A DNA stretch of 63,808 bases, the filler included, from Octopus bimaculoides (taxonomy: Eukaryota): NCBI RefSeq assembly GCF_001194135.2. It is 6 parts of 6 records of this genome, joined end to end, with 100 filler letters (N's around TTAATTAATTAA, not from the genome) between each part and the next. Parts side by side here need not be neighbours in the genome. Positions count along the whole stretch, not along the records: positions 1 to 14,204 come from NC_068981.1; 5 more parts are not named here. One strand, given 5' to 3'. The translations under genes and the position numbers were made by a program. Position 1 is the stretch's first letter; the number at the start of each line of letters is the position of its first letter. Positions 2,140 through 29,412 of this stretch are shown piece by piece. The notes beneath the pieces were generated by a model, which saw nothing but the letters and a program-made list of their open reading frames with translations, ran no database searches and was not told the origin of the DNA.

Positions 2140-2474
2140 GTTTTTTATTATGATATTTTAACATTAATAAAAAAAAGTGTAATGTTCATTAAGTTCAATT
2201 AGCACTTTCATACGTTCGTGGTAATCATCAGATTTCAAAATGCTATTAACTGACAGTTGATTTCTTGACAGCTGCATGTGGATTGGTCAAAACCATATTC
2301 CAAAAATTGAGCTTGCTGGAGCATTCTAAGAGGTGCTAAAGTTGTCAAGAACTCAGCTGTCAGTTAAATACATTTTAAAATCTGATGATTACTACGAACA
2401 TATGAAAGCTCTAATTGAACTTTATGAATGTTACAAAATATTTTTTTTAATGTTAAAATACCATAATAAAAAAC
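2140..2474. mobile_element. Fold-back MITE, about 130-bp imperfect inverted arms; left end lost in gap
   Basis: 2140-2272 is the reverse complement of 2341-2474 (e.g. gtaatcatcagattt / aaatctgatgattac). Confidence 0.8.
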
Positions 2475-2656: not shown

Positions 2657-5600
2657 TGGTTTTTGTCACTGTTTACAATGACCTTTAAAGAAATTTTTTA
2701 ATGTATCATATACATGTAACTTTTGACACTGAATCCGAATTTCTTATTCATTTATTCTAGAAAAATTTTGCAAAAATGTTTCAGGTATTCAAAGTGTGAT
2801 AATTTTCAGAATTTTCATTGGCATGTCAAAACATTAAACTAGAATTTTATAAAATAAATTATCTTTCTTGTATCTCCTCCTCCTTGTGCGCATGTGCAGC
2901 ATCTTTGGTTACTATGGAAACAGTTCTTCACAATCAGCTATGCAACACGTGGTGTTTCTTTGCTTTGGTTACTATGGAAATAAAAATTTTTGCCACAGTG
3001 ATATGTAAAATACTCACTTCTGATTGGCTAAAATACTCAAATTTTGAAAATTTTAAAGGCTAATAACTTTTTAATTATGGATTTATAGGAAAAATGAATT
3101 TCATTTTCATAATTAGTATACAAAACTTAATCCATATACCAAATTTGAAAACAATTGGAACAGGATTGTAAACAGAAGCGAAAACCACAAAGATCCAGAA
3201 ATGAATAGAATATGCATTTGTTATTGTAATAAATAAACAAATATTTATTGGTAGAAATTTATCAAAGGATAAATATTTTCATTAAGTAAACTTACAACAT
3301 ATAAAAGACGTGGAAGTCGGAAGGTAAGTATTCACCACATTCTCTTTTCCCAGCTTACTCACATCACCATCTCTATCGCTGAACAAGCCTTAATGTTCAT
3401 TCAAAAGTAATATTCTTTCATAATTTTGAAAATTCTCCTCCCACCCCCAGCGAACAACATTTACAAGTAATCCAGAAAATGCTCAGCGTTGATGTATAAA
3501 CAACTTTGGCATATCAAGCAGGAAGTTCTCTTTCTCACAATTTTCAATATCACAGGCTTGCAGACAATTCATTTAAAATAATGCTTTTCATTTGTGCACA
3601 CACATGCACGCGCGCGCGTGCACACACACACATGCGTTCCTTTGATGCAGGTGCATCCAGAATGTACCTCTAGTCGGAGGGAGAGAGGGCTGCATCAGCA
3701 CCCAGCAGGTACTCATGGCTGAGTGGACTGGACCAACATGAAAATGAAGTGATTTTTTTTTCAGGGACACAATGCACCAACCAGTTCAGGAATTGAACCC
3801 CCATGTTCTTCTGATCAAGACTCAAAGAAACTAACCACAAGGCCATGCAGCTTTAGGATTAAAAGTAGTCAAGCAGGAAACTAATGAGATTCGATGTTTA
3901 GCTCAATTTATCTCATCTTTGTGAAATAAACAAATAATGTATCTGTTTATCACTTGTCATATGTAGATAAGATATAATCAAGCTGATTAATTCTCTTTGA
4001 ACTGTTACTTCTATTAGGTTATGCAACCATCCTGCTTTCTATCAAATCAGCTCAGGATACTTCTGTTAACCCACATAATGGGTTCAATAATTATCCATCT
4101 TCAAAGGGGTCGTTAATGATTTCTATAAAAAGAATTATTTACATAAATCATAATGGTTACACACACACAGGCGTAGTCTTCCAGCATTATAGTTAATTCA
4201 TTTGAAATGAGTATTATTCTACATGAATCAACAAACGCCATTCATTTGAAGTTAATGTTAGTTGTGTATATGAATTTTCTAAAGAATAAGTCTCCCTATA
4301 TAGCGTTCACAGAAACAATTTGACAACCCGATTAGCATATCATCATAATCAACATAATCATTGTAATCATTATAATCATCATCATCATTGTTATAATTGG
4401 TTGTTGTTGTCATTGAAATCATTGTCGTCGTTGCTGTCATCATCATCATCATCATCACAATTTTTTCATTCTCATTGTAATTTTTAACATCAGCATTCTC
4501 CTCATCAGCATAATCATTATAATTTTCATTGTCATGATAACCATCGTCATTTCTATATTCAGCACAACTGATTTTTTTTTTTTTTTGTCTGTACTTCACT
4601 GCAATATCCACAGAATTGACTGATATTAGAATCTCAGCCTCGTCTTTGCTTCCATCATCCATTCTTTTCTAGGAAAGAAAGTCTATTGTCTCTTTTAGCA
4701 TGGTCATGAGACTGTTTTTGCTTGTAAACAAGGAGAGAGAGAGAGAGAGAGAGAGAGATAGTGTGTGTGTGTGTGCCTGTACATGTGTGTGCCTGTACAT
4801 GTGTGCATAATTGCAAAATAATATCGTGTATTAATTTGTCTTACATGATGTCTGTGTTGTCAATATTACATATGTTGTAGGTTTATGATTTCTCTTAATA
4901 CCTGGCTGCACTCTAATTTATTTATTTAGGTCAGTGTTTTTCAGTATAATATGTATGCATGCATGTATGTATGTATGTATGTATGCATGTATGTATGCAT
5001 GTATGTATGTATGCATGTATGTATGTATGTATGTATGTATGTATGTGTGTGTATATGTATACATGTATATACATATGAATATGTATGCATATGCATGTAT
5101 ATATGTATACATATACATCTGTATATAAGTGTATATATACATATAAATGTATATACATGTATATATACATATGCACACACACACACACACATATATGTAT
5201 ATATGTATACATATGTATGTATACAAATACATGTTTATATAATATATATATATATATANNNNNNNNNNNNNNNNNNNNNNNNNNNNNNNNNNNNNNNNNN
5301 NNNNNNNNNNNNNNNNNNNNNNNNNNNNNNNNNNNNNNNNNNNNNNNNNNNNNNNNNNNNNNNNNNNNNNNNNNNNNNNNNNNNNNNNNNNNNNNNNNNN
5401 NNNNNNNNNNNNNNNNNNNNNNNNNNNNNNNNNNNNNNNNNNNNNNNNNNNNNNNNNNNNNNNNNNNNNNNNNNNNNNNNNNNNNNNNNNNNNNNNNNNN
5501 NNNNNNNNNNNNNNNNNNNNNNNNNNNNNNNNNNNNNNNNNNNNNNNNNNNNNNNNNNNNNNNNNNNNNNNNNNNNNNNNNNNNNNNNNNNNNNNNNNNN

Positions 5601-5869
5601 NNNNNNNNNNNNNNNNNNNNNNNNNNNNNNNNNNNNNNNNNNNNNNNNNNNNNNNNNNNNNNNNNNNNNNNNNNNNNNNNNNNNNNNNNNNNNNNNNNNN
5701 NNNNNNNNNNNNNNNNNNNNNNNNNNNNNNNNNNNNNNNNNNNNNNNNNNNNNNNNNNNNNNNNNNNNNNNNNNNNNNNNNNNNNNNNNNNNNNNNNNNN
5801 NNNNNNNNNNNNNNNNNNNNNNNNNNNNNNNNNNNNNTCCTCCTCCATCTCCTTCCCTTTTTCCTTTAA

Positions 5870-9500: not shown

Positions 9501-9689
9501 AACTTTTTTAATTACTCATGAATTTTAAAATTAATAAATATGTAATTTAGATTTCTTGTAATTACTTGTTTAAGGTAACAAATAAAAATCTGAACAAATT
9601 CTAAGAAAATTAAAAATAAAATAATAGGGTTGCTTATTCTGAAACAATAACTTTTTTTTTCATATTTTGTTAGAACTTTTGATAAAATA

Positions 9690-10357
<668 letters not shown>

Positions 10358-10720
10358 TTTTCTTTCTTCAAATTTTCTTCCCTTTCTCGCCGAGTGTTTT
10401 CCGTACACCTAGGGCAGAGAAGCTCATTGTATGCATTCCCAGTTTACACATGCAAAATCACAGGTAAAATATGTATGTAAAAAAAATTAATAAATAAATA
10501 AATTCATGAATGGATGTTGTTTTCACAGCAATAATGCTCTTCTCAGTACATGAGTCGTTCCAGTTAACACGATTTTTTGCACTTCCTGTAGGGATGGTAA
10601 GCCTGGTATCATTTTCAAATAGGTTTCAGTACCTTTTTTTATCATTCCTAGAGATCCTACAATCACTGGTATGGTAGTTGCCTTGAGGTGCCACATTTTT
10701 TCAATTTCTATTAGTAAGTC

Positions 10721-10723
<3 letters not shown>
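10358..10723 (-). mobile_element. 5'-truncated R4/Dong-like LINE: C-terminus of the restriction-like endonuclease region plus 3'UTR
   Basis: 10723->10523 translates without stops to KDLLIEIEKMWHLKATTIPVIVGSLGMIKKGTETYLKMIPGLPSLQEVQKIVLTGTTHVLRRALLL*, matching the R4-clade KYxDL..E..xxW...PVxxGxLG...QK..LxGT..ILR pattern. Preceded by (TAA)n on its sense strand. Confidence 0.75.
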
Positions 10724-10779
<56 letters not shown>

Positions 10780-11269
10780 CATTATTATTATTTTTATTTA
10801 TTTATTTATTTATTTATTTATTATTATTTTTTTTACTTCAGGAAGAAATGGTTTGGAAGATGTGAAAGTCCTGTGGTTGAAGAATAAAAAAAAAACAAAA
10901 AAAACAGAAACTGCTTTTTTAGTCTGTGATGATATTGTAAATGCATTCCTTAAATTTCAAGTTTTATATAAAGGCAATTACTCTTTTCAAGATACATTTT
11001 CATTTAACCTTATTTGTTGAAACCACCCATCCTCCAATATATGTCAATATTTAACATTCCCAAGAAAAAAACTCTAGTACTGAGTATGAATGTTTGAAAT
11101 AAAATTAGAAAACAAATTTAGTTCATGGATGAGTTTTTCACATTTCAGAACTAAGGTGATTTTTAAACATAACAATTAGTGAGAGAAATATGGTTGATTA
11201 TATCAACTACATTACTTTTTAGAAACTGTGAAACGTAAAAAAAGAAAAAAAAAAAAAAGAAATAATAAT

Positions 11270-11485
11270 GGTCTTTGATTTTGGCACCAGGCAAGCAATT
11301 TTGAGGAGAGGGGGTTAGTTAGTGCAATTAACATCATTACTTAGATTGGTATTTTATTTCATTGACCTTGGAATGGTGAAAGTTGAAGTTGGCCTTGGTG
11401 GAATTTGAACTGAGAATGTAAAGAGCTGGAACAAATTCTACGAACCATTTTTATCCAATGCTCTAACGATTCTGCCAGCATGCCA
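11270..11485 (-). mobile_element. SINE family C, degenerate
   Basis: gctctaacgattctgccagc head and gaaagttgaagttggccttggtggaatttgaact core in reverse. Confidence 0.7.
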
Positions 11486-12789
11486 ACAATAAAACAATGT
11501 AGGAGCGCTATGTGGGTGCTTGACTTGCTAGACATAGTACCCAAATTTCCCTTAAACCATTTCCTAACACCTTTAAAAGGGATACATTAGCTACATTGGT
11601 GAGACATCTTTAAATTGTAGGACTGTTCAATCGGGGTGAAATTGGAGTTAAAGAATAAAAGGGGTATCTTGTTGACAATGAGAGTAAAAACTGGCTATAA
11701 AAGATGCATGGAGTAGTCTGAGAGTCTTTCAGTCATTTGGTGCCATAAGATGAAGAAGATGAGATGTAACAATTGAAAATGATTAAAGAATTGGCCATGA
11801 CTTGAAATAGCTGGAAGTGTTATCGTCACCAAATATTGTGTGTGTGTGTGCATGTTCACTGTTCTAAGTTACGGATCCATTTTTATATTTGTATATGTAC
11901 TAATTTTATTAATTACCATCTATAATCATTTTTTACATTTCTGTTTACAGTCTTGTATTTCTTAGTCTAATGATATTTATTTGCCACTTTTTAATTTTGC
12001 TGATACAGGTAAATAAAAATTGTAACTTCAATTGCACATGCATTACTTATTCATTTAAAATTTGAGAAAGTATCTTACAATATTCATGCAATATTCACAT
12101 ATGTATACTTAACTCTGAAAAACATACTTCAATAAATATACTTAACTATCTTGCCTTCCTGTAATACTTCTTTTGTAGGGAGCATGGTTACTAGTTTGTT
12201 GTGACTGCATCTTCTGAGGTCTTCTTTTTGATCTGCTTCTACAAAGAGGCACCATTCAATACTAGTTTACCGAATCTTTTGTTGGAAAATAAAGTCATAC
12301 ACACAATGTTAAACTTTAGTTAGTTATCTCCATTATTTTCCAACAACAACTTTGGTCTCCTTTTTGCCATGCTTATGAAATAAAAAAAACAAAAAAAACC
12401 TACCAGCATTGCACCCATGATTTTTGGAAACTTTTTTTCACACTCAGAATTAATGAAGCAGGGAATTAACTACCTGCACTAGTTAATTGTTAAAACTCTG
12501 CATTCCTTTGAAAATTCCAAGCTTCAGGAAATTTACCAACACTTCTACTGATGTTCCTATGCAGCCTTTCCTTTTTTATGGCTCTTTTACTGTGCACTTT
12601 TCTGTGCTTCATCCCTTTTTGTTTTACTTGACTTATTGCCATTTTTTAATCTCCTCTCTTGCCTTTTCCTGATGAGTTGAGCACTGTATTATTGTTGTTG
12701 TTGTTATTATTATTATTATCATTATTGTTAAAATTAAAAGAAGAGTGCCATTGTTATCTAGTGAATGATATTTCGACATCTTGTGTGTC

Positions 12790-14100
12790 TTCAACTGGTT
12801 CAAAAAATTTTGACTCTATCTTCAGGAAGAGTTACCTCAATCTCATTCTTGTTGAGGTTTCTTTTTGATAAATTTATGGTTTTTGAGTTTATATGTTGTG
12901 TGTGGTTAATTAAATTTGGTGTATTATTGGGTCCGGTGTGTGGTTTTGGTATTTTCTCCCTAAAAAAGAAATTGTGTTTCCACGTCTTTGTTGTCTGGTC
13001 TCGGTGTTCTAGTTTCCAGGTAGGTGAGAGGATGGTTCATGTCTTTTATACCAATTCCGTTGATTATAAGTTTTATTTTCTTCCCATCTTTTATGCTTTT
13101 TTCGTCATTCAGGATATTTGGGATTTTTGGTTGTAAATTGTGTTTCTTCAGTTGTCATGATTATTATTCCTATTATAGTATCTGTGCTGTCTGTATTTTA
13201 TTTGTTTTTCTTCCCATGTATTCATCCATCTGGAGTACATGTTATTACGGGTTGTTGGTTGTCTGTATGTTATTTGTCTTTCATGTCTTTTCCTTTTCAT
13301 TTATCCATCTATGGTGTTTGGACTTATGGGTTGATAGTTGTCTTCTATATTTCATTTATTGGCTATTTGCAGTGTTATGTCTTGTTGGATATGGTTTTCT
13401 AGTTTGTACTTGGAGTGAGATGGAGGTCATTTCCGCATATGTTTTTGGGTAATTAGAGGTTTGGTATCTCAGTTTGATTCTTCTGGGGTTAGTGTCTATA
13501 TTTGTTTTCGATTTCTTTGTATTTCTTTGTTGTTGTGGTTTCGTTTTCATAATGGATTTATCTCCATAGTTTTTTTCATAGTTAGTGAACCACTCTTGTT
13601 GTTTTTCCCACATTTTTATGGATTTCTCTTCTTCCCGCTTTGTGTCTTCTTTCCATGGTTTTTGCAGTTTTTCATGATATTGATTGTCGCTTTGCTCAGC
13701 AATTTCAGCAAACATAATTGCATCAATATTCTTCACCTTTTCTTCGTGTCTTACTTTTCGCGATTGTAGAAAAGCGATTTCTGTTTCCAATTGGCATAGA
13801 GCTAAATTCGCATGTATACTTGTCTCTCCCAGTGATTCATTCCTTATTTCTTTAATAAGAAATTTTCTGGGCAGGATTGGACTTTCTGTACTTTGCCAGT
13901 TTTGGTAGGTGTTTGCTATATTGTTGGATCGAATGCTCTTCCAATATTCACGTTTCCTTTGGTTCAGGAGTTTCTTCCAGAGATATGGCTTCAAGGTATT
14001 ATGCTGTTGTATTTCTAAAGATGTGGCTTCAAGTGAGTTTGTTCTTATTTCCTCCTTGTTGTTTGTCTCTGTTGTTGGAGTACCTTCTGTATGGGTATCA
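12790..14100 (-). mobile_element. Penelope-like element, 5' portion (212-aa upstream frame 13356-13994 up to the start of RT)
   Basis: Homologous to 39440-40180 (WEKQQEWFTNYEK vs WVKQQEWLTNYEK; agaaacctcaacaagaatgagat in both), which continues into PLE RT and GIY-YIG. Confidence 0.75.
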
Positions 14101-14102
14101 TT

Positions 14103-14140
<38 letters not shown>

Positions 14141-14204
14141 CATATATTTATATATATATACACATATATATATTTATATATACATATATATTTATACACA
14201 CACA

Positions 14205-28699: not shown

Positions 28700-29412
28700 G
28701 CAACACTTGAACTCCGAACGTGAAGAACCAGAAGAGGTGCTGCTACGCATTTTGTCCGGCGTACTAACGATTCTGCTAGCTCGGTGCCTTAACAACCAGA
28801 GTAATAAACCTTTCTACAAAAGACACATGGTCTGAGAATTTTTCTTTTGGTGGGGGGGGTGTAAGTCGATTACATCAGCCCCAATGTTTCACTGGTACTT
28901 AATTTATCTACCCCCGAAAGGTTCAAAGGCAAAGTCGACCCCGGCGGATTTTGAACTCGGAACGTAACGGCAGACGAAATACCGCTAAGCATTTCGCTCG
29001 GCGTGCTAACGATTCTGCCAGCTCACCGCCTTTAATAATAACAATAATAATAATAATAATAATAATTTGTGAATTTCCGTGTGTAAACTGGGAATGCGTA
29101 CAATGAGCTTCTCTGCCCTAGGTGTACGGAAAACACTCGGCGAGAAATGGAAGAAGATTTGAAGAAAGAAGAAAAAACAACATAATAATGATAATCCTTT
29201 CTACTATAGGCACAAGGCCTGAAATCTTAGGGGAGGGGACTAGTCGATTACATTGACCGTAGTACTCAACGGGTATTTATTTCTTCGAAACTGAAAGGAT
29301 GAAAGGTGAAGTCGACATCAGCGACACTCGAACTCAGAGCGCAAAGCGCCAGAAGAAGCTCTGCAAATCATTTTGCCCGGCGTGCTGACGATTCTGCCAG
29401 CTCGCCGACCTC
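28700..29412 (-). mobile_element. Tandem array of three SINE family C copies separated by AT-rich/(TAA)n tracts
   Basis: Heads (aacgattctgc-agctc) near 28770, 29010 and 29390; cores gaaaggcaaagtcgac. Confidence 0.85.
29067..29178 (+). mobile_element. Second R4/Dong-like insertion, 3'UTR only
   Basis: gtgtaaactgggaatgc-tacaatgagcttctctgccctaggtgtacggaaaacactcggcgagaaa is nearly identical to the reverse complement of 10362-10455. Flanked by (TAA)n on both sides. Confidence 0.75.

What the first reader, a model, noticed from the sequence alone, without database searches (positions are those of the whole stretch)
10358..10790. R4/Dong-like LINE inserted in (TAA)n tracts beside SINE arrays (two independent copies)
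Seen: an intact 66-aa C-terminus typical of restriction-like-endonuclease LINEs plus 3'UTR at 10723->10358, 5'-truncated exactly at a (TAA)n run. A second, shorter copy at 29067-29178 has (TAA)n on both sides. Both read (TAA)n on their sense strand and lie antisense to adjacent family C SINEs. Known: Dong of Bombyx mori (R4 clade) targets TAA repeats. Inference: a microsatellite-targeting site-specific retrotransposon uses SINE (ATT)n tails as renewable landing pads in this genome. The open frame and the high identity between the copies suggest recent activity.
Basis: partly seen in the sequence, partly recalled or inferred. Interest (0 to 1): 0.72.

Follow-up and report, generated by a model that had tools for sequence, protein, structure and literature searches.

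The report
Dead Dong-type LINE fragment in SINE tail
This is a short, dead-on-arrival tail fragment of a Dong/R4-type jumping gene that specifically lands in TAA repeats, here most likely the (ATT)n tail of an octopus SINE; both the family and its TAA targeting are already known, so the finding is real but ordinary.

Summary
Window 10723->10526 (- strand) encodes 66 open codons ending in TGA. A 165-nt 3'UTR follows, down to 10358. The 5' break abuts a ~107-nt (TAA)n tract. The peptide is the extreme C-terminus of a single-ORF LINE with RT, a CCHC motif and a PD..D..K restriction-like endonuclease, related to solved R2 proteins (E 1e-30).

Across 80 related loci from metagenome contigs (source organisms not identified here), (TAA)n lies in sense orientation 3' of the element in 31/48 copies. 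It lies at the 5' break in 25/49 truncated copies. TAA:TTA runs number 103:14. So the family does target TAA repeats as Dong does.

The window is octopod. Dong-R4 LINEs are already reported as abundant in octopus, and TAA targeting by Dong is published for molluscs.

The copy keeps only the last 5% of the ORF, with no catalytic residue, so it cannot move on its own. Its 3' end joins directly to a SINE body that lacks its last ~13 nt and its tail, with no TAA there. Insertion into the SINE tail is therefore likely but atypical. Recent activity and the second copy could not be checked.

Side result: a covarying 3'UTR hairpin is conserved across the family.

The parts
10526..10723 (-). 66-codon remnant of the C-terminal tail of the LINE ORF (region after the restriction-like endonuclease K-x-x-K-Y motif); corresponds to residues 1159-1222 of the intact 1222-aa relative in L010
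10523..10525 (-). stop codon TGA of the LINE ORF
10358..10522 (-). 3'UTR, 165 nt, complete to within about 10 nt of the point where the closest relative (L001) meets its (TAA)8
10386..10415 (-). conserved 3'UTR hairpin (GCCCUAGG-stem-CGGAA loop-stem-UCGGC); proposed RNA element recognised by the element's protein to start reverse transcription
10722..10833 (-). (TAA)n then (TAAA)n tract on the LINE sense strand, equal to (ATT)n/(ATTT)n on the + strand; the target microsatellite at the 5' break, probably the displaced tail of SINE C
10161..10357 (+). tRNA-derived SINE copy C, lacking the last ~13 nt of the body and the (ATT)n tail that copies A and B carry; abuts the LINE 3' end
9800..10158 (+). 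SINE copy B with (ATT)8 tail continuing into (GTT)40; shows the intact 3' end and tail of the SINE family

Best explanation
The feature is a severely 5'-truncated, non-autonomous copy (366 bp: 198 coding nt, the stop codon and a 165-nt 3'UTR) of a Dong/R4-type LINE in an octopod genome. Full-length relatives encode one ~1220-aa protein with four parts: an N-terminal region without zinc fingers, a reverse transcriptase, a CCHC motif and a PD..D..K restriction-like endonuclease. They carry no AP-endonuclease domain. By analogy with R2 (inferred), the protein binds its own 3'UTR, for which I propose the covarying hairpin about 30-38 nt from the 3' end. It then nicks one strand of a (TAA)n tract and uses the nick to prime reverse transcription. 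Copying often stops early, which gives truncated copies joined to the TAA tract. In the window the 5' joint shows ATAAA microhomology. Because insertion is orientation-specific, the element always reads (TAA)n on its sense strand. It therefore lies antisense to any retroelement whose (ATT)n tail supplied the tract. Here the tract was most likely the tail of SINE copy C. The priming nick, or a later deletion, removed the last ~13 nt of the SINE and the near part of the tail, so only the 5' side keeps the repeat. Shown: the homology, the domain make-up of relatives, the family-wide TAA flanks and strand bias, and the hairpin covariation. Inferred: the TPRT steps, the role of the hairpin, the SINE-tail origin of the tract, and Dong/R4 clade membership.
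For: Identity: the 66-aa peptide finds 22 relatives, best E 3.4e-27. The closest, L001, continues upstream into CRFC-x8-H-x4-C, KPD-x14-D and E/DKLxKY motifs and an RT domain. Homologue P0024 aligns with solved R2 proteins from the RT through the endonuclease (E 1.3e-30). The intact 1222-aa ORF in L010 has RVT_1 and zf-RVT only, no AP endonuclease, and a single Cys in its first 480 residues. Target: across the 82 loci held (L001, L002 and the 80 metagenome loci), 103 TAA-sense runs against 14 TTA runs. Among assessable copies, 31/48 have perfect (TAA)>=4 within 300 nt after the stop, 25/49 truncated copies have it within 120 nt of the 5' break, and many of the rest carry degenerate TAA. Near-full-length L007 starts directly after (TAA)17. 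L002 and several other loci hold tandem same-strand copies separated by TAA. 3'UTR hairpin: 90.4% of cells paired against 20-44% when the partners are slid, and covariation 0.565 against 0.05-0.12. Host and literature: a window ORF matches only Octopus proteins. Dong-R4 is abundant in octopus (PMC13282606, PMC9115989, PMC8967140). The Dong target is (TAA)n in insects, molluscs and cnidarians (PMC7998251, PMC3812793). SINE tail: copies A and B end in (ATT)n, while C stops ~13 nt short exactly where the LINE 3' end begins. In L001 the LINE's 3' (TAA)8 is also the (TTA)8 tail of an antisense CR1-like LINE. A copy of that CR1-like LINE with an (ATT)n/(GTT)n tail sits at window 12368-12730.
Against: The window copy has no TAA at its 3' junction, so canonical priming from a TAA nick is not what the sequence shows. 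A later deletion or an off-repeat nick must be assumed. Clade placement rests on architecture, target and literature, not on a tree with Dong, R4, Hero, NeSL and R2 references. Rfam found no HDV-like ribozyme at the 5' end of L007. Pfam found no Myb domain in the N-terminus. Only one copy from this genome could be examined.
Confidence: 0.85

Rival explanations
1. The LINE carries its own (TAA)n 3' tail, as the Drosophila I factor does, and inserts without target preference. On this reading the TAA run at the 5' break in the window is a coincidence.
For: Most copies show (TAA)n only a fixed distance after the 3'UTR, which an element-encoded tail would also produce.
Against: Half of the assessable 5'-truncated copies (25/49) also have (TAA)>=4 at the 5' break, at many different truncation points. 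TTA-orientation runs, a rough background, number only 14 in about 270 kb. Full-length L007 begins right after (TAA)17. Tandem same-strand copies are separated by TAA.
Confidence: 0.04
2. The element is a restriction-like-endonuclease LINE of another clade (Hero, NeSL or an R2-like lineage) that evolved TAA targeting independently, so 'Dong/R4' is the wrong label.
For: No reference Dong or R4 sequence was available, so no tree was built. The only solved relatives are R2 proteins. Hero and R2 families are also reported in octopus (PMC13282606).
Against: TAA targeting in sense orientation, a zinc-finger-free N-terminus and homologues in Exaiptasia, fish and a likely insect host (termite-gut metagenome contigs, my reading of the sample names) match the published description of R4/Dong-like elements (PMC7998251). 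In O. vulgaris, recent Dong-R4 insertions (1129) far outnumber Hero (13) and R2 (1).
Confidence: 0.08
3. The LINE fragment is of the Dong type, but the TAA tract was an independent microsatellite and not the tail of SINE C. The contact with the SINE would then come from a later deletion or rearrangement, so the locus says nothing about SINE tails as landing pads.
For: There is no TAA between the LINE 3' end and the SINE. The SINE is truncated at its 3' end, which retroposition does not produce. The tract (107 nt plus a TAAA extension) is much longer than the tails of copies A and B (24-28 nt).
Against: The LINE sits exactly where the SINE C tail should start, in the one orientation the tail allows. 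The same geometry is seen in L001 with a CR1-like LINE tail.
Confidence: 0.25

Closest known systems
Dong (Bombyx mori) and Dong-like elements (DongAg, DongBg of the snail Biomphalaria glabrata); R4 clade of non-LTR retrotransposons
   Same: Single ORF with RT, CCHC and restriction-like endonuclease. Inserted in (TAA)n with TAA on the sense strand at both ends. No N-terminal zinc fingers. Frequent 5' truncation. Already annotated as 'Dong-R4' in octopus repeat libraries (PMC9115989, PMC13282606, PMC8967140).
   Different: Nothing in kind. This copy is a 366-bp remnant with a non-canonical 3' junction. Clade membership was not confirmed by a tree here.
R2 (28S rDNA-specific LINE; solved structures 8GH6, 8IBW, 9DOU, 9NL3)
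   Same: The RT, linker, CCHC and PD..D..K endonuclease align over about 700 residues. The presumed target-primed reverse transcription starts from a 3'UTR RNA bound by the protein.
   Different: R2 has N-terminal zinc fingers plus Myb and targets one site in 28S rDNA. This family has a Cys-free N-terminus and sits in TAA microsatellites. Identity to R2 is low.
Kibi and Koshi, LINEs that target (TC)n and (TTC)n in fish
   Same: Microsatellite-specific LINEs, grouped with Dong among microsatellite-targeting elements in PMC3812793. Their R4-clade placement is from my memory of Kojima and Fujiwara 2004 and was not checked here.
   Different: Different repeat unit as target.

Membership tests
Restriction-like-endonuclease (RLE) LINEs (R2/R4/NeSL/Hero/CRE group) | Reverse transcriptase domain in the same ORF | tested here: met
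   Met in relatives only: RVT_1 in L001, L002 and L010 and in P0024 against R2 structures. The window fragment itself holds no RT.
Restriction-like-endonuclease (RLE) LINEs (R2/R4/NeSL/Hero/CRE group) | CCHC motif followed by a PD-x(12-14)-D ... K endonuclease, C-terminal to the RT | tested here: met
   L001 and P0024 carry C-x2-C-x8-H-x4-C, then (K/R)PD-x14-D, then E/DKLxKY. This region aligns with the R2 endonuclease region. The window copy begins just after the KY, so it keeps none of these residues.
Restriction-like-endonuclease (RLE) LINEs (R2/R4/NeSL/Hero/CRE group) | No AP-endonuclease domain | tested here: met
   Pfam scan of the intact 1222-aa ORF of L010 at E<=5 gives RVT_1 and zf-RVT only.
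Dong / R4 clade | Insertion into (TAA)n, sense-strand TAA on both flanks | tested here: met
   Family: 31/48 copies at the 3' side, 25/49 at the 5' side, 103 TAA runs against 14 TTA runs. Window copy: 5' flank yes (10722-10833), 3' flank no.
Dong / R4 clade | RT-domain phylogeny groups with Dong and R4 rather than R2, Hero, NeSL or CRE | not testable with these tools
   No Dong, R4, Hero or NeSL reference sequences were reachable. The Dong paper (PMC309301) is not held. Only R2 is in the structure library.
Dong / R4 clade | N-terminus without zinc fingers, with a diverged Myb/SANT-like domain (PMC7998251) | tested here: inconclusive
   L010 residues 1-480 contain one Cys, so no zinc finger. 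A W-x2-E-x5-L... stretch looks Myb-like by eye, but Pfam gives no hit.
Dong / R4 clade | HDV-like self-cleaving ribozyme at the 5' end (PMC3774820) | tested here: inconclusive
   Rfam finds nothing in L007 30-240. A hand fold of L007 55-151 has the right helix order (P1 CCACG/CGUGG, P3 CCAG/CUGG, P2 AGGUCUU/AAACCU), but it was not validated.

The most novel reading that the evidence does not exclude
Two linked readings are not excluded. First, the covarying 3'UTR hairpin (CCNNAGG, a 5-6 bp stem, an NGGWW loop, then YCGG), held 30-38 nt from the TAA junction in every lineage sampled among the metagenome loci, may be the so far undescribed RNA handle by which Dong-type proteins pick their template. 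Second, in octopus the (ATT)n tails of the hugely amplified SINEs and CR1-like LINEs may be the main supply of landing sites. That would tie Dong-R4 copy number to SINE and CR1 bursts. It would also allow nicks just outside the repeat, as at this locus.
Probability: 0.3. Interest if true: 0.35.

Novelty: already known. Interest (0 to 1): 0.15.

Why it matters
It matters little as a discovery. It is a correct spot of a known TAA-targeting LINE family in a genome where that family is already annotated as abundant. It is useful as annotation: it explains the open 66-codon frame, the long TAA tract and the truncated SINE at this locus. The conserved 3'UTR hairpin and the use of other retroelements' (ATT)n tails as targets are small leads on how R4/Dong-type elements choose template and target. 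They could interest people who study R2-like elements as site-specific insertion tools.

Tried and rejected
Rfam scans of L001, L007, L010 and window 9600-11600 returned only low-complexity artefacts (CrcZ, snoRNA-like) and no HDV ribozyme or R2 element.

ARAGORN found no tRNA in the window, so the SINE heads are too diverged to be called.

Pfam on the N-terminus of L010, on the CR1-like ORF of L001 and on the window ORF 13356-13994 gave nothing.

The original Dong paper is not held, so no reference sequence or tree was possible.

The supplements of the octopus LINE paper hold no Dong consensus.

Folding the whole 165-nt 3'UTR gives no unusual stability (z = 0.03). Only the local hairpin is supported, and that by covariation.

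A host-gene exon or domesticated protein was rejected. The frame is cut at a microsatellite, covers 5% of a transposon ORF and is flanked by repeats.

The open frame was rejected as evidence of recent activity. dN/dS of 0.075 against L001 reflects selection on active lineages before insertion, not the age of this copy.

Full report
OBSERVATION. On the - strand the window reads a (TAA)n(TAAA)n tract (10833->10722). Tandem Repeats Finder scores it as period 3, 33.7 copies, 94% matches. An open frame of 66 codons follows at once (10723->10526): KDLLIEIEKMWHLK...HVLRRALLL. The stop TGA lies at 10525-10523, and 165 nt of non-coding sequence run down to 10358. Three copies of a tRNA-derived SINE lie next to it on the + strand: A at about 9679-9799, B at 9800-10041 and C at 10161-10357. 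A fourth lies on the - strand at 11283-11479.

WHAT THE ORF IS. The 66-aa peptide finds 22 relatives, the best at E = 3.4e-27 and 86% identity. These are short gene calls. Their contigs show that they are the tail of a much longer frame.

In the closest contig, L001, the same frame continues upstream through KPDIVV-x-LLIDMS-x-DKLRKYKDL, CRFC-x8-H-x4-C and a reverse transcriptase domain. Longer homologues such as P0024 (765 aa) carry RT, CCHC and (K/R)PD-x14-D...EKLSKY in one protein. P0024 aligns with the solved R2 retrotransposon proteins from the RT through the endonuclease, at E = 1.3e-30.

Contig L010 holds an intact 1222-aa ORF. Pfam finds RVT_1 and zf-RVT in it and no AP-endonuclease domain. 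Its first 480 residues hold a single cysteine, so there is no zinc finger.

The window fragment matches residues 1159-1222 of that ORF. It begins just after the K-x-x-K-Y motif. It therefore keeps no catalytic residue and cannot be autonomous.

IS THE FAMILY TAA-SPECIFIC? I fetched 80 loci from metagenome contigs that encode the C-terminal domain. I did not identify the organisms behind these contigs. From the sample names I read many as host DNA of corals and termites, but that is a guess. Separately, named protein relatives come from corals, a shrimp, a hydrozoan, a sea anemone and a fish.

Perfect runs of at least four TAA units in the element's sense orientation number 103 across the 82 loci held (L001, L002 and the 80 metagenome loci). 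Runs in the opposite orientation number 14. Among copies with at least 300 nt of sequence after the stop, 31 of 48 have such a run within 300 nt. Most lie 55-190 nt after the stop. Many of the remainder have short or degenerate TAA at that position.

Among 5'-truncated copies with upstream sequence, 25 of 49 have a TAA run within 120 nt of the first detectable homology. Often it is within 0-7 nt, and the truncation points differ from copy to copy. Near-full-length L007 starts directly after (TAA)17. L010 ends in more than 90 nt of TAA. L002 and several other contigs hold two to four same-strand copies separated by TAA runs.

An element that merely carried its own TAA tail would not show TAA at variable 5' breaks. 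The family is therefore inserted in TAA microsatellites in one orientation. That is the published behaviour of Dong in insects, molluscs and cnidarians (PMC7998251; PMC3812793, which lists DongBg of the snail Biomphalaria).

HOST AND PRIOR KNOWLEDGE. A 212-aa ORF elsewhere in the window (13356-13994, - strand) has only two relatives among 5.8 billion proteins, both from Octopus (O. sinensis 65%, O. vulgaris 51%). The window is therefore octopod.

Dong-R4 LINEs are listed among the abundant LINE families of coleoid cephalopods (PMC8967140). A full-length Dong consensus was noted in O. bimaculoides, without evidence of recent activity (PMC9115989). A 2026 annotation of O. vulgaris reports five recently active Dong-R4 families with 1129 insertions (PMC13282606). 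The finding is thus a correct recognition of something already known.

THE LOCUS IN DETAIL. Aligned with L001, the window 3'UTR is complete to within about 10 nt of the point where L001 meets its (TAA)8. In the window, however, the next base belongs to SINE C. SINE copies A, B and D continue for about 13 nt past that point (...GCC-AAAAT-AGAAAGG-like). Copies A and B then carry (ATT)n tails. Copy C stops at ...GGCCTTGTG.

On the + strand the order is therefore as follows:
- the SINE C body, minus its last ~13 nt and its tail;
- the LINE, antisense, with its 3' end first;
- (ATT)35(ATTT)n.

The simplest reading is insertion into the tail of SINE C. The distal part of the tail would have been left at the LINE's 5' break. 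The proximal tail plus 13 nt of SINE would have been lost, either at insertion (a priming nick just outside the repeat) or by a later deletion. The sequence alone cannot separate these two.

The 5' joint shows ATAAA microhomology between the repeat and the LINE's own AAA-TAT-AAA codons. This is what end-joining of an aborted cDNA to a TAA target would give.

A second case of the same geometry is L001. There the LINE's 3' (TAA)8 is also the (TTA)8 tail of an antisense CR1-like LINE. That CR1-like family shares the 3' terminus ...TGAGCACTGT and also occurs in the window at about 12368-12686, with an (ATT)n/(GTT)n tail at 12687-12730. Retroelement (ATT)n tails thus do supply TAA tracts in this lineage. 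Two loci, however, do not make a genome-wide rule.

A SIDE RESULT: THE 3'UTR HAIRPIN. The 3'UTRs vary in length and are otherwise unalignable. They share one block, CCNNAGG, then 15 nt, then YCGG, placed 30-38 nt before the TAA junction.

I picked 26 distinct sequences by those flanks alone. In them the 15 nt form a 5-6 bp stem with a pentaloop, usually NGGWW. In the named structure 90.4% of cells pair, against 20-44% when the partners are slid by one to three columns. All six stem pairs show changes on both sides. The covariation score is 0.565, against 0.05-0.12 for the slid controls, and 0 of 500 shuffles reach it.

The window copy keeps the hairpin at 10386-10415, and it appears in the minimum-energy fold. 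The 3'UTR as a whole is not unusually stable (z = 0.03). By analogy with R2, whose protein binds its 3'UTR to start reverse transcription, I propose that this hairpin is the template-recognition element. That role is inferred, not shown. I did not find it described in the papers I read, but I did not search the literature for it specifically.

WHAT IS NOT SUPPORTED. Recent activity cannot be judged from this copy. The closest available relative differs by dS about 1.1 with dN/dS 0.075. That reflects selection on active lineages before insertion, not the age of this copy. Two nearly invariant residues are changed in the window copy (VGSLG for VGALG, ALLL for ALS-).

Placement in the R4 clade could not be tested by phylogeny, because no reference sequences were available. 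Rfam finds no HDV-like ribozyme at the 5' end of L007. A hand fold has the right helix order but was not validated.

VERDICT. It is a dead 366-bp remnant of a known TAA-targeting Dong/R4-type LINE, most likely lodged in a SINE tail, in a genome where the family is already annotated.

Noticed in passing
window 10386-10415 (- strand); L001 1807-1836 and matching sites in 24 other loci: A conserved 3'UTR hairpin (CCNNAGG, 5-6 bp variable stem, NGGWW loop, YCGG) lies 30-38 nt before the TAA junction. Covariation across the family is strong: 90% of cells paired against 20-44% when the partners are slid.
   Followed up: yes
window 9679-10357: Three SINE copies form a head-to-tail array. The (ATT)n tail of A runs straight into the head of B at 9797-9800, and B's tail into the head of C at 10158-10161 (both joints read TTAAGGTGGTGAGC). 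This suggests that the SINE's own partner LINE also prefers existing tails or a TTAA-like site.
   Followed up: partly
window 10018-10158: The tail of SINE B switches from (ATT)8 to a perfect (GTT)40, 119 nt with 100% matches. The CR1-like tail at 12687-12730 mixes ATT and GTT units as well.
   Followed up: no
window 12368-12730 (+ strand); L001 1898-2601 (- strand): The 3' end of a CR1-like LINE carries an (ATT)n/(GTT)n tail. Its terminus ...TGAGCACTGT is shared with the antisense LINE in L001, whose tail is occupied by the Dong-like element. It is a candidate partner LINE for (ATT)n-tailed SINEs, although the SINE 3' end is not similar to it.
   Followed up: partly
window 13356-13994 (- strand): A 212-aa lysine- and glutamate-rich ORF has no Pfam hit. 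Its only relatives are uncharacterised proteins of Octopus sinensis (65%) and O. vulgaris (51%). It is probably a transposon-derived ORF specific to octopods.
   Followed up: partly
L002 2342-10464: Four same-strand copies of restriction-like-endonuclease LINEs lie within 8 kb, three of them followed by a short (TAA)4 run (the third instead lies just after the TAA run of the second) (two are about 39% and one about 68% identical to the query). This looks like repeated insertion into one TAA locus. L039, L063, L069, L075, L076 and L078 also hold two copies each.
   Followed up: partly
L007 53-151: The 5'UTR directly after (TAA)17 can be drawn by hand with the nested helix order of an HDV-like ribozyme (P1 55-59/90-94, P3 74-77/86-89, P2 60-66/146-151). 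Rfam gives no hit.
   Followed up: partly
window about 1360-2160 and 5260-5850: Runs of N (assembly gaps) sit next to long TA/TATG/TATACA-type simple repeats at 4950-5258. A similar AT-rich repeat lies at 14106-14196.
   Followed up: no
window 2166-2273 and 2340-2447: An inverted repeat of 108 nt, 82% complementary, 66 nt apart, lies just after an assembly gap. It may be a foldback or MITE-like element.
   Followed up: no
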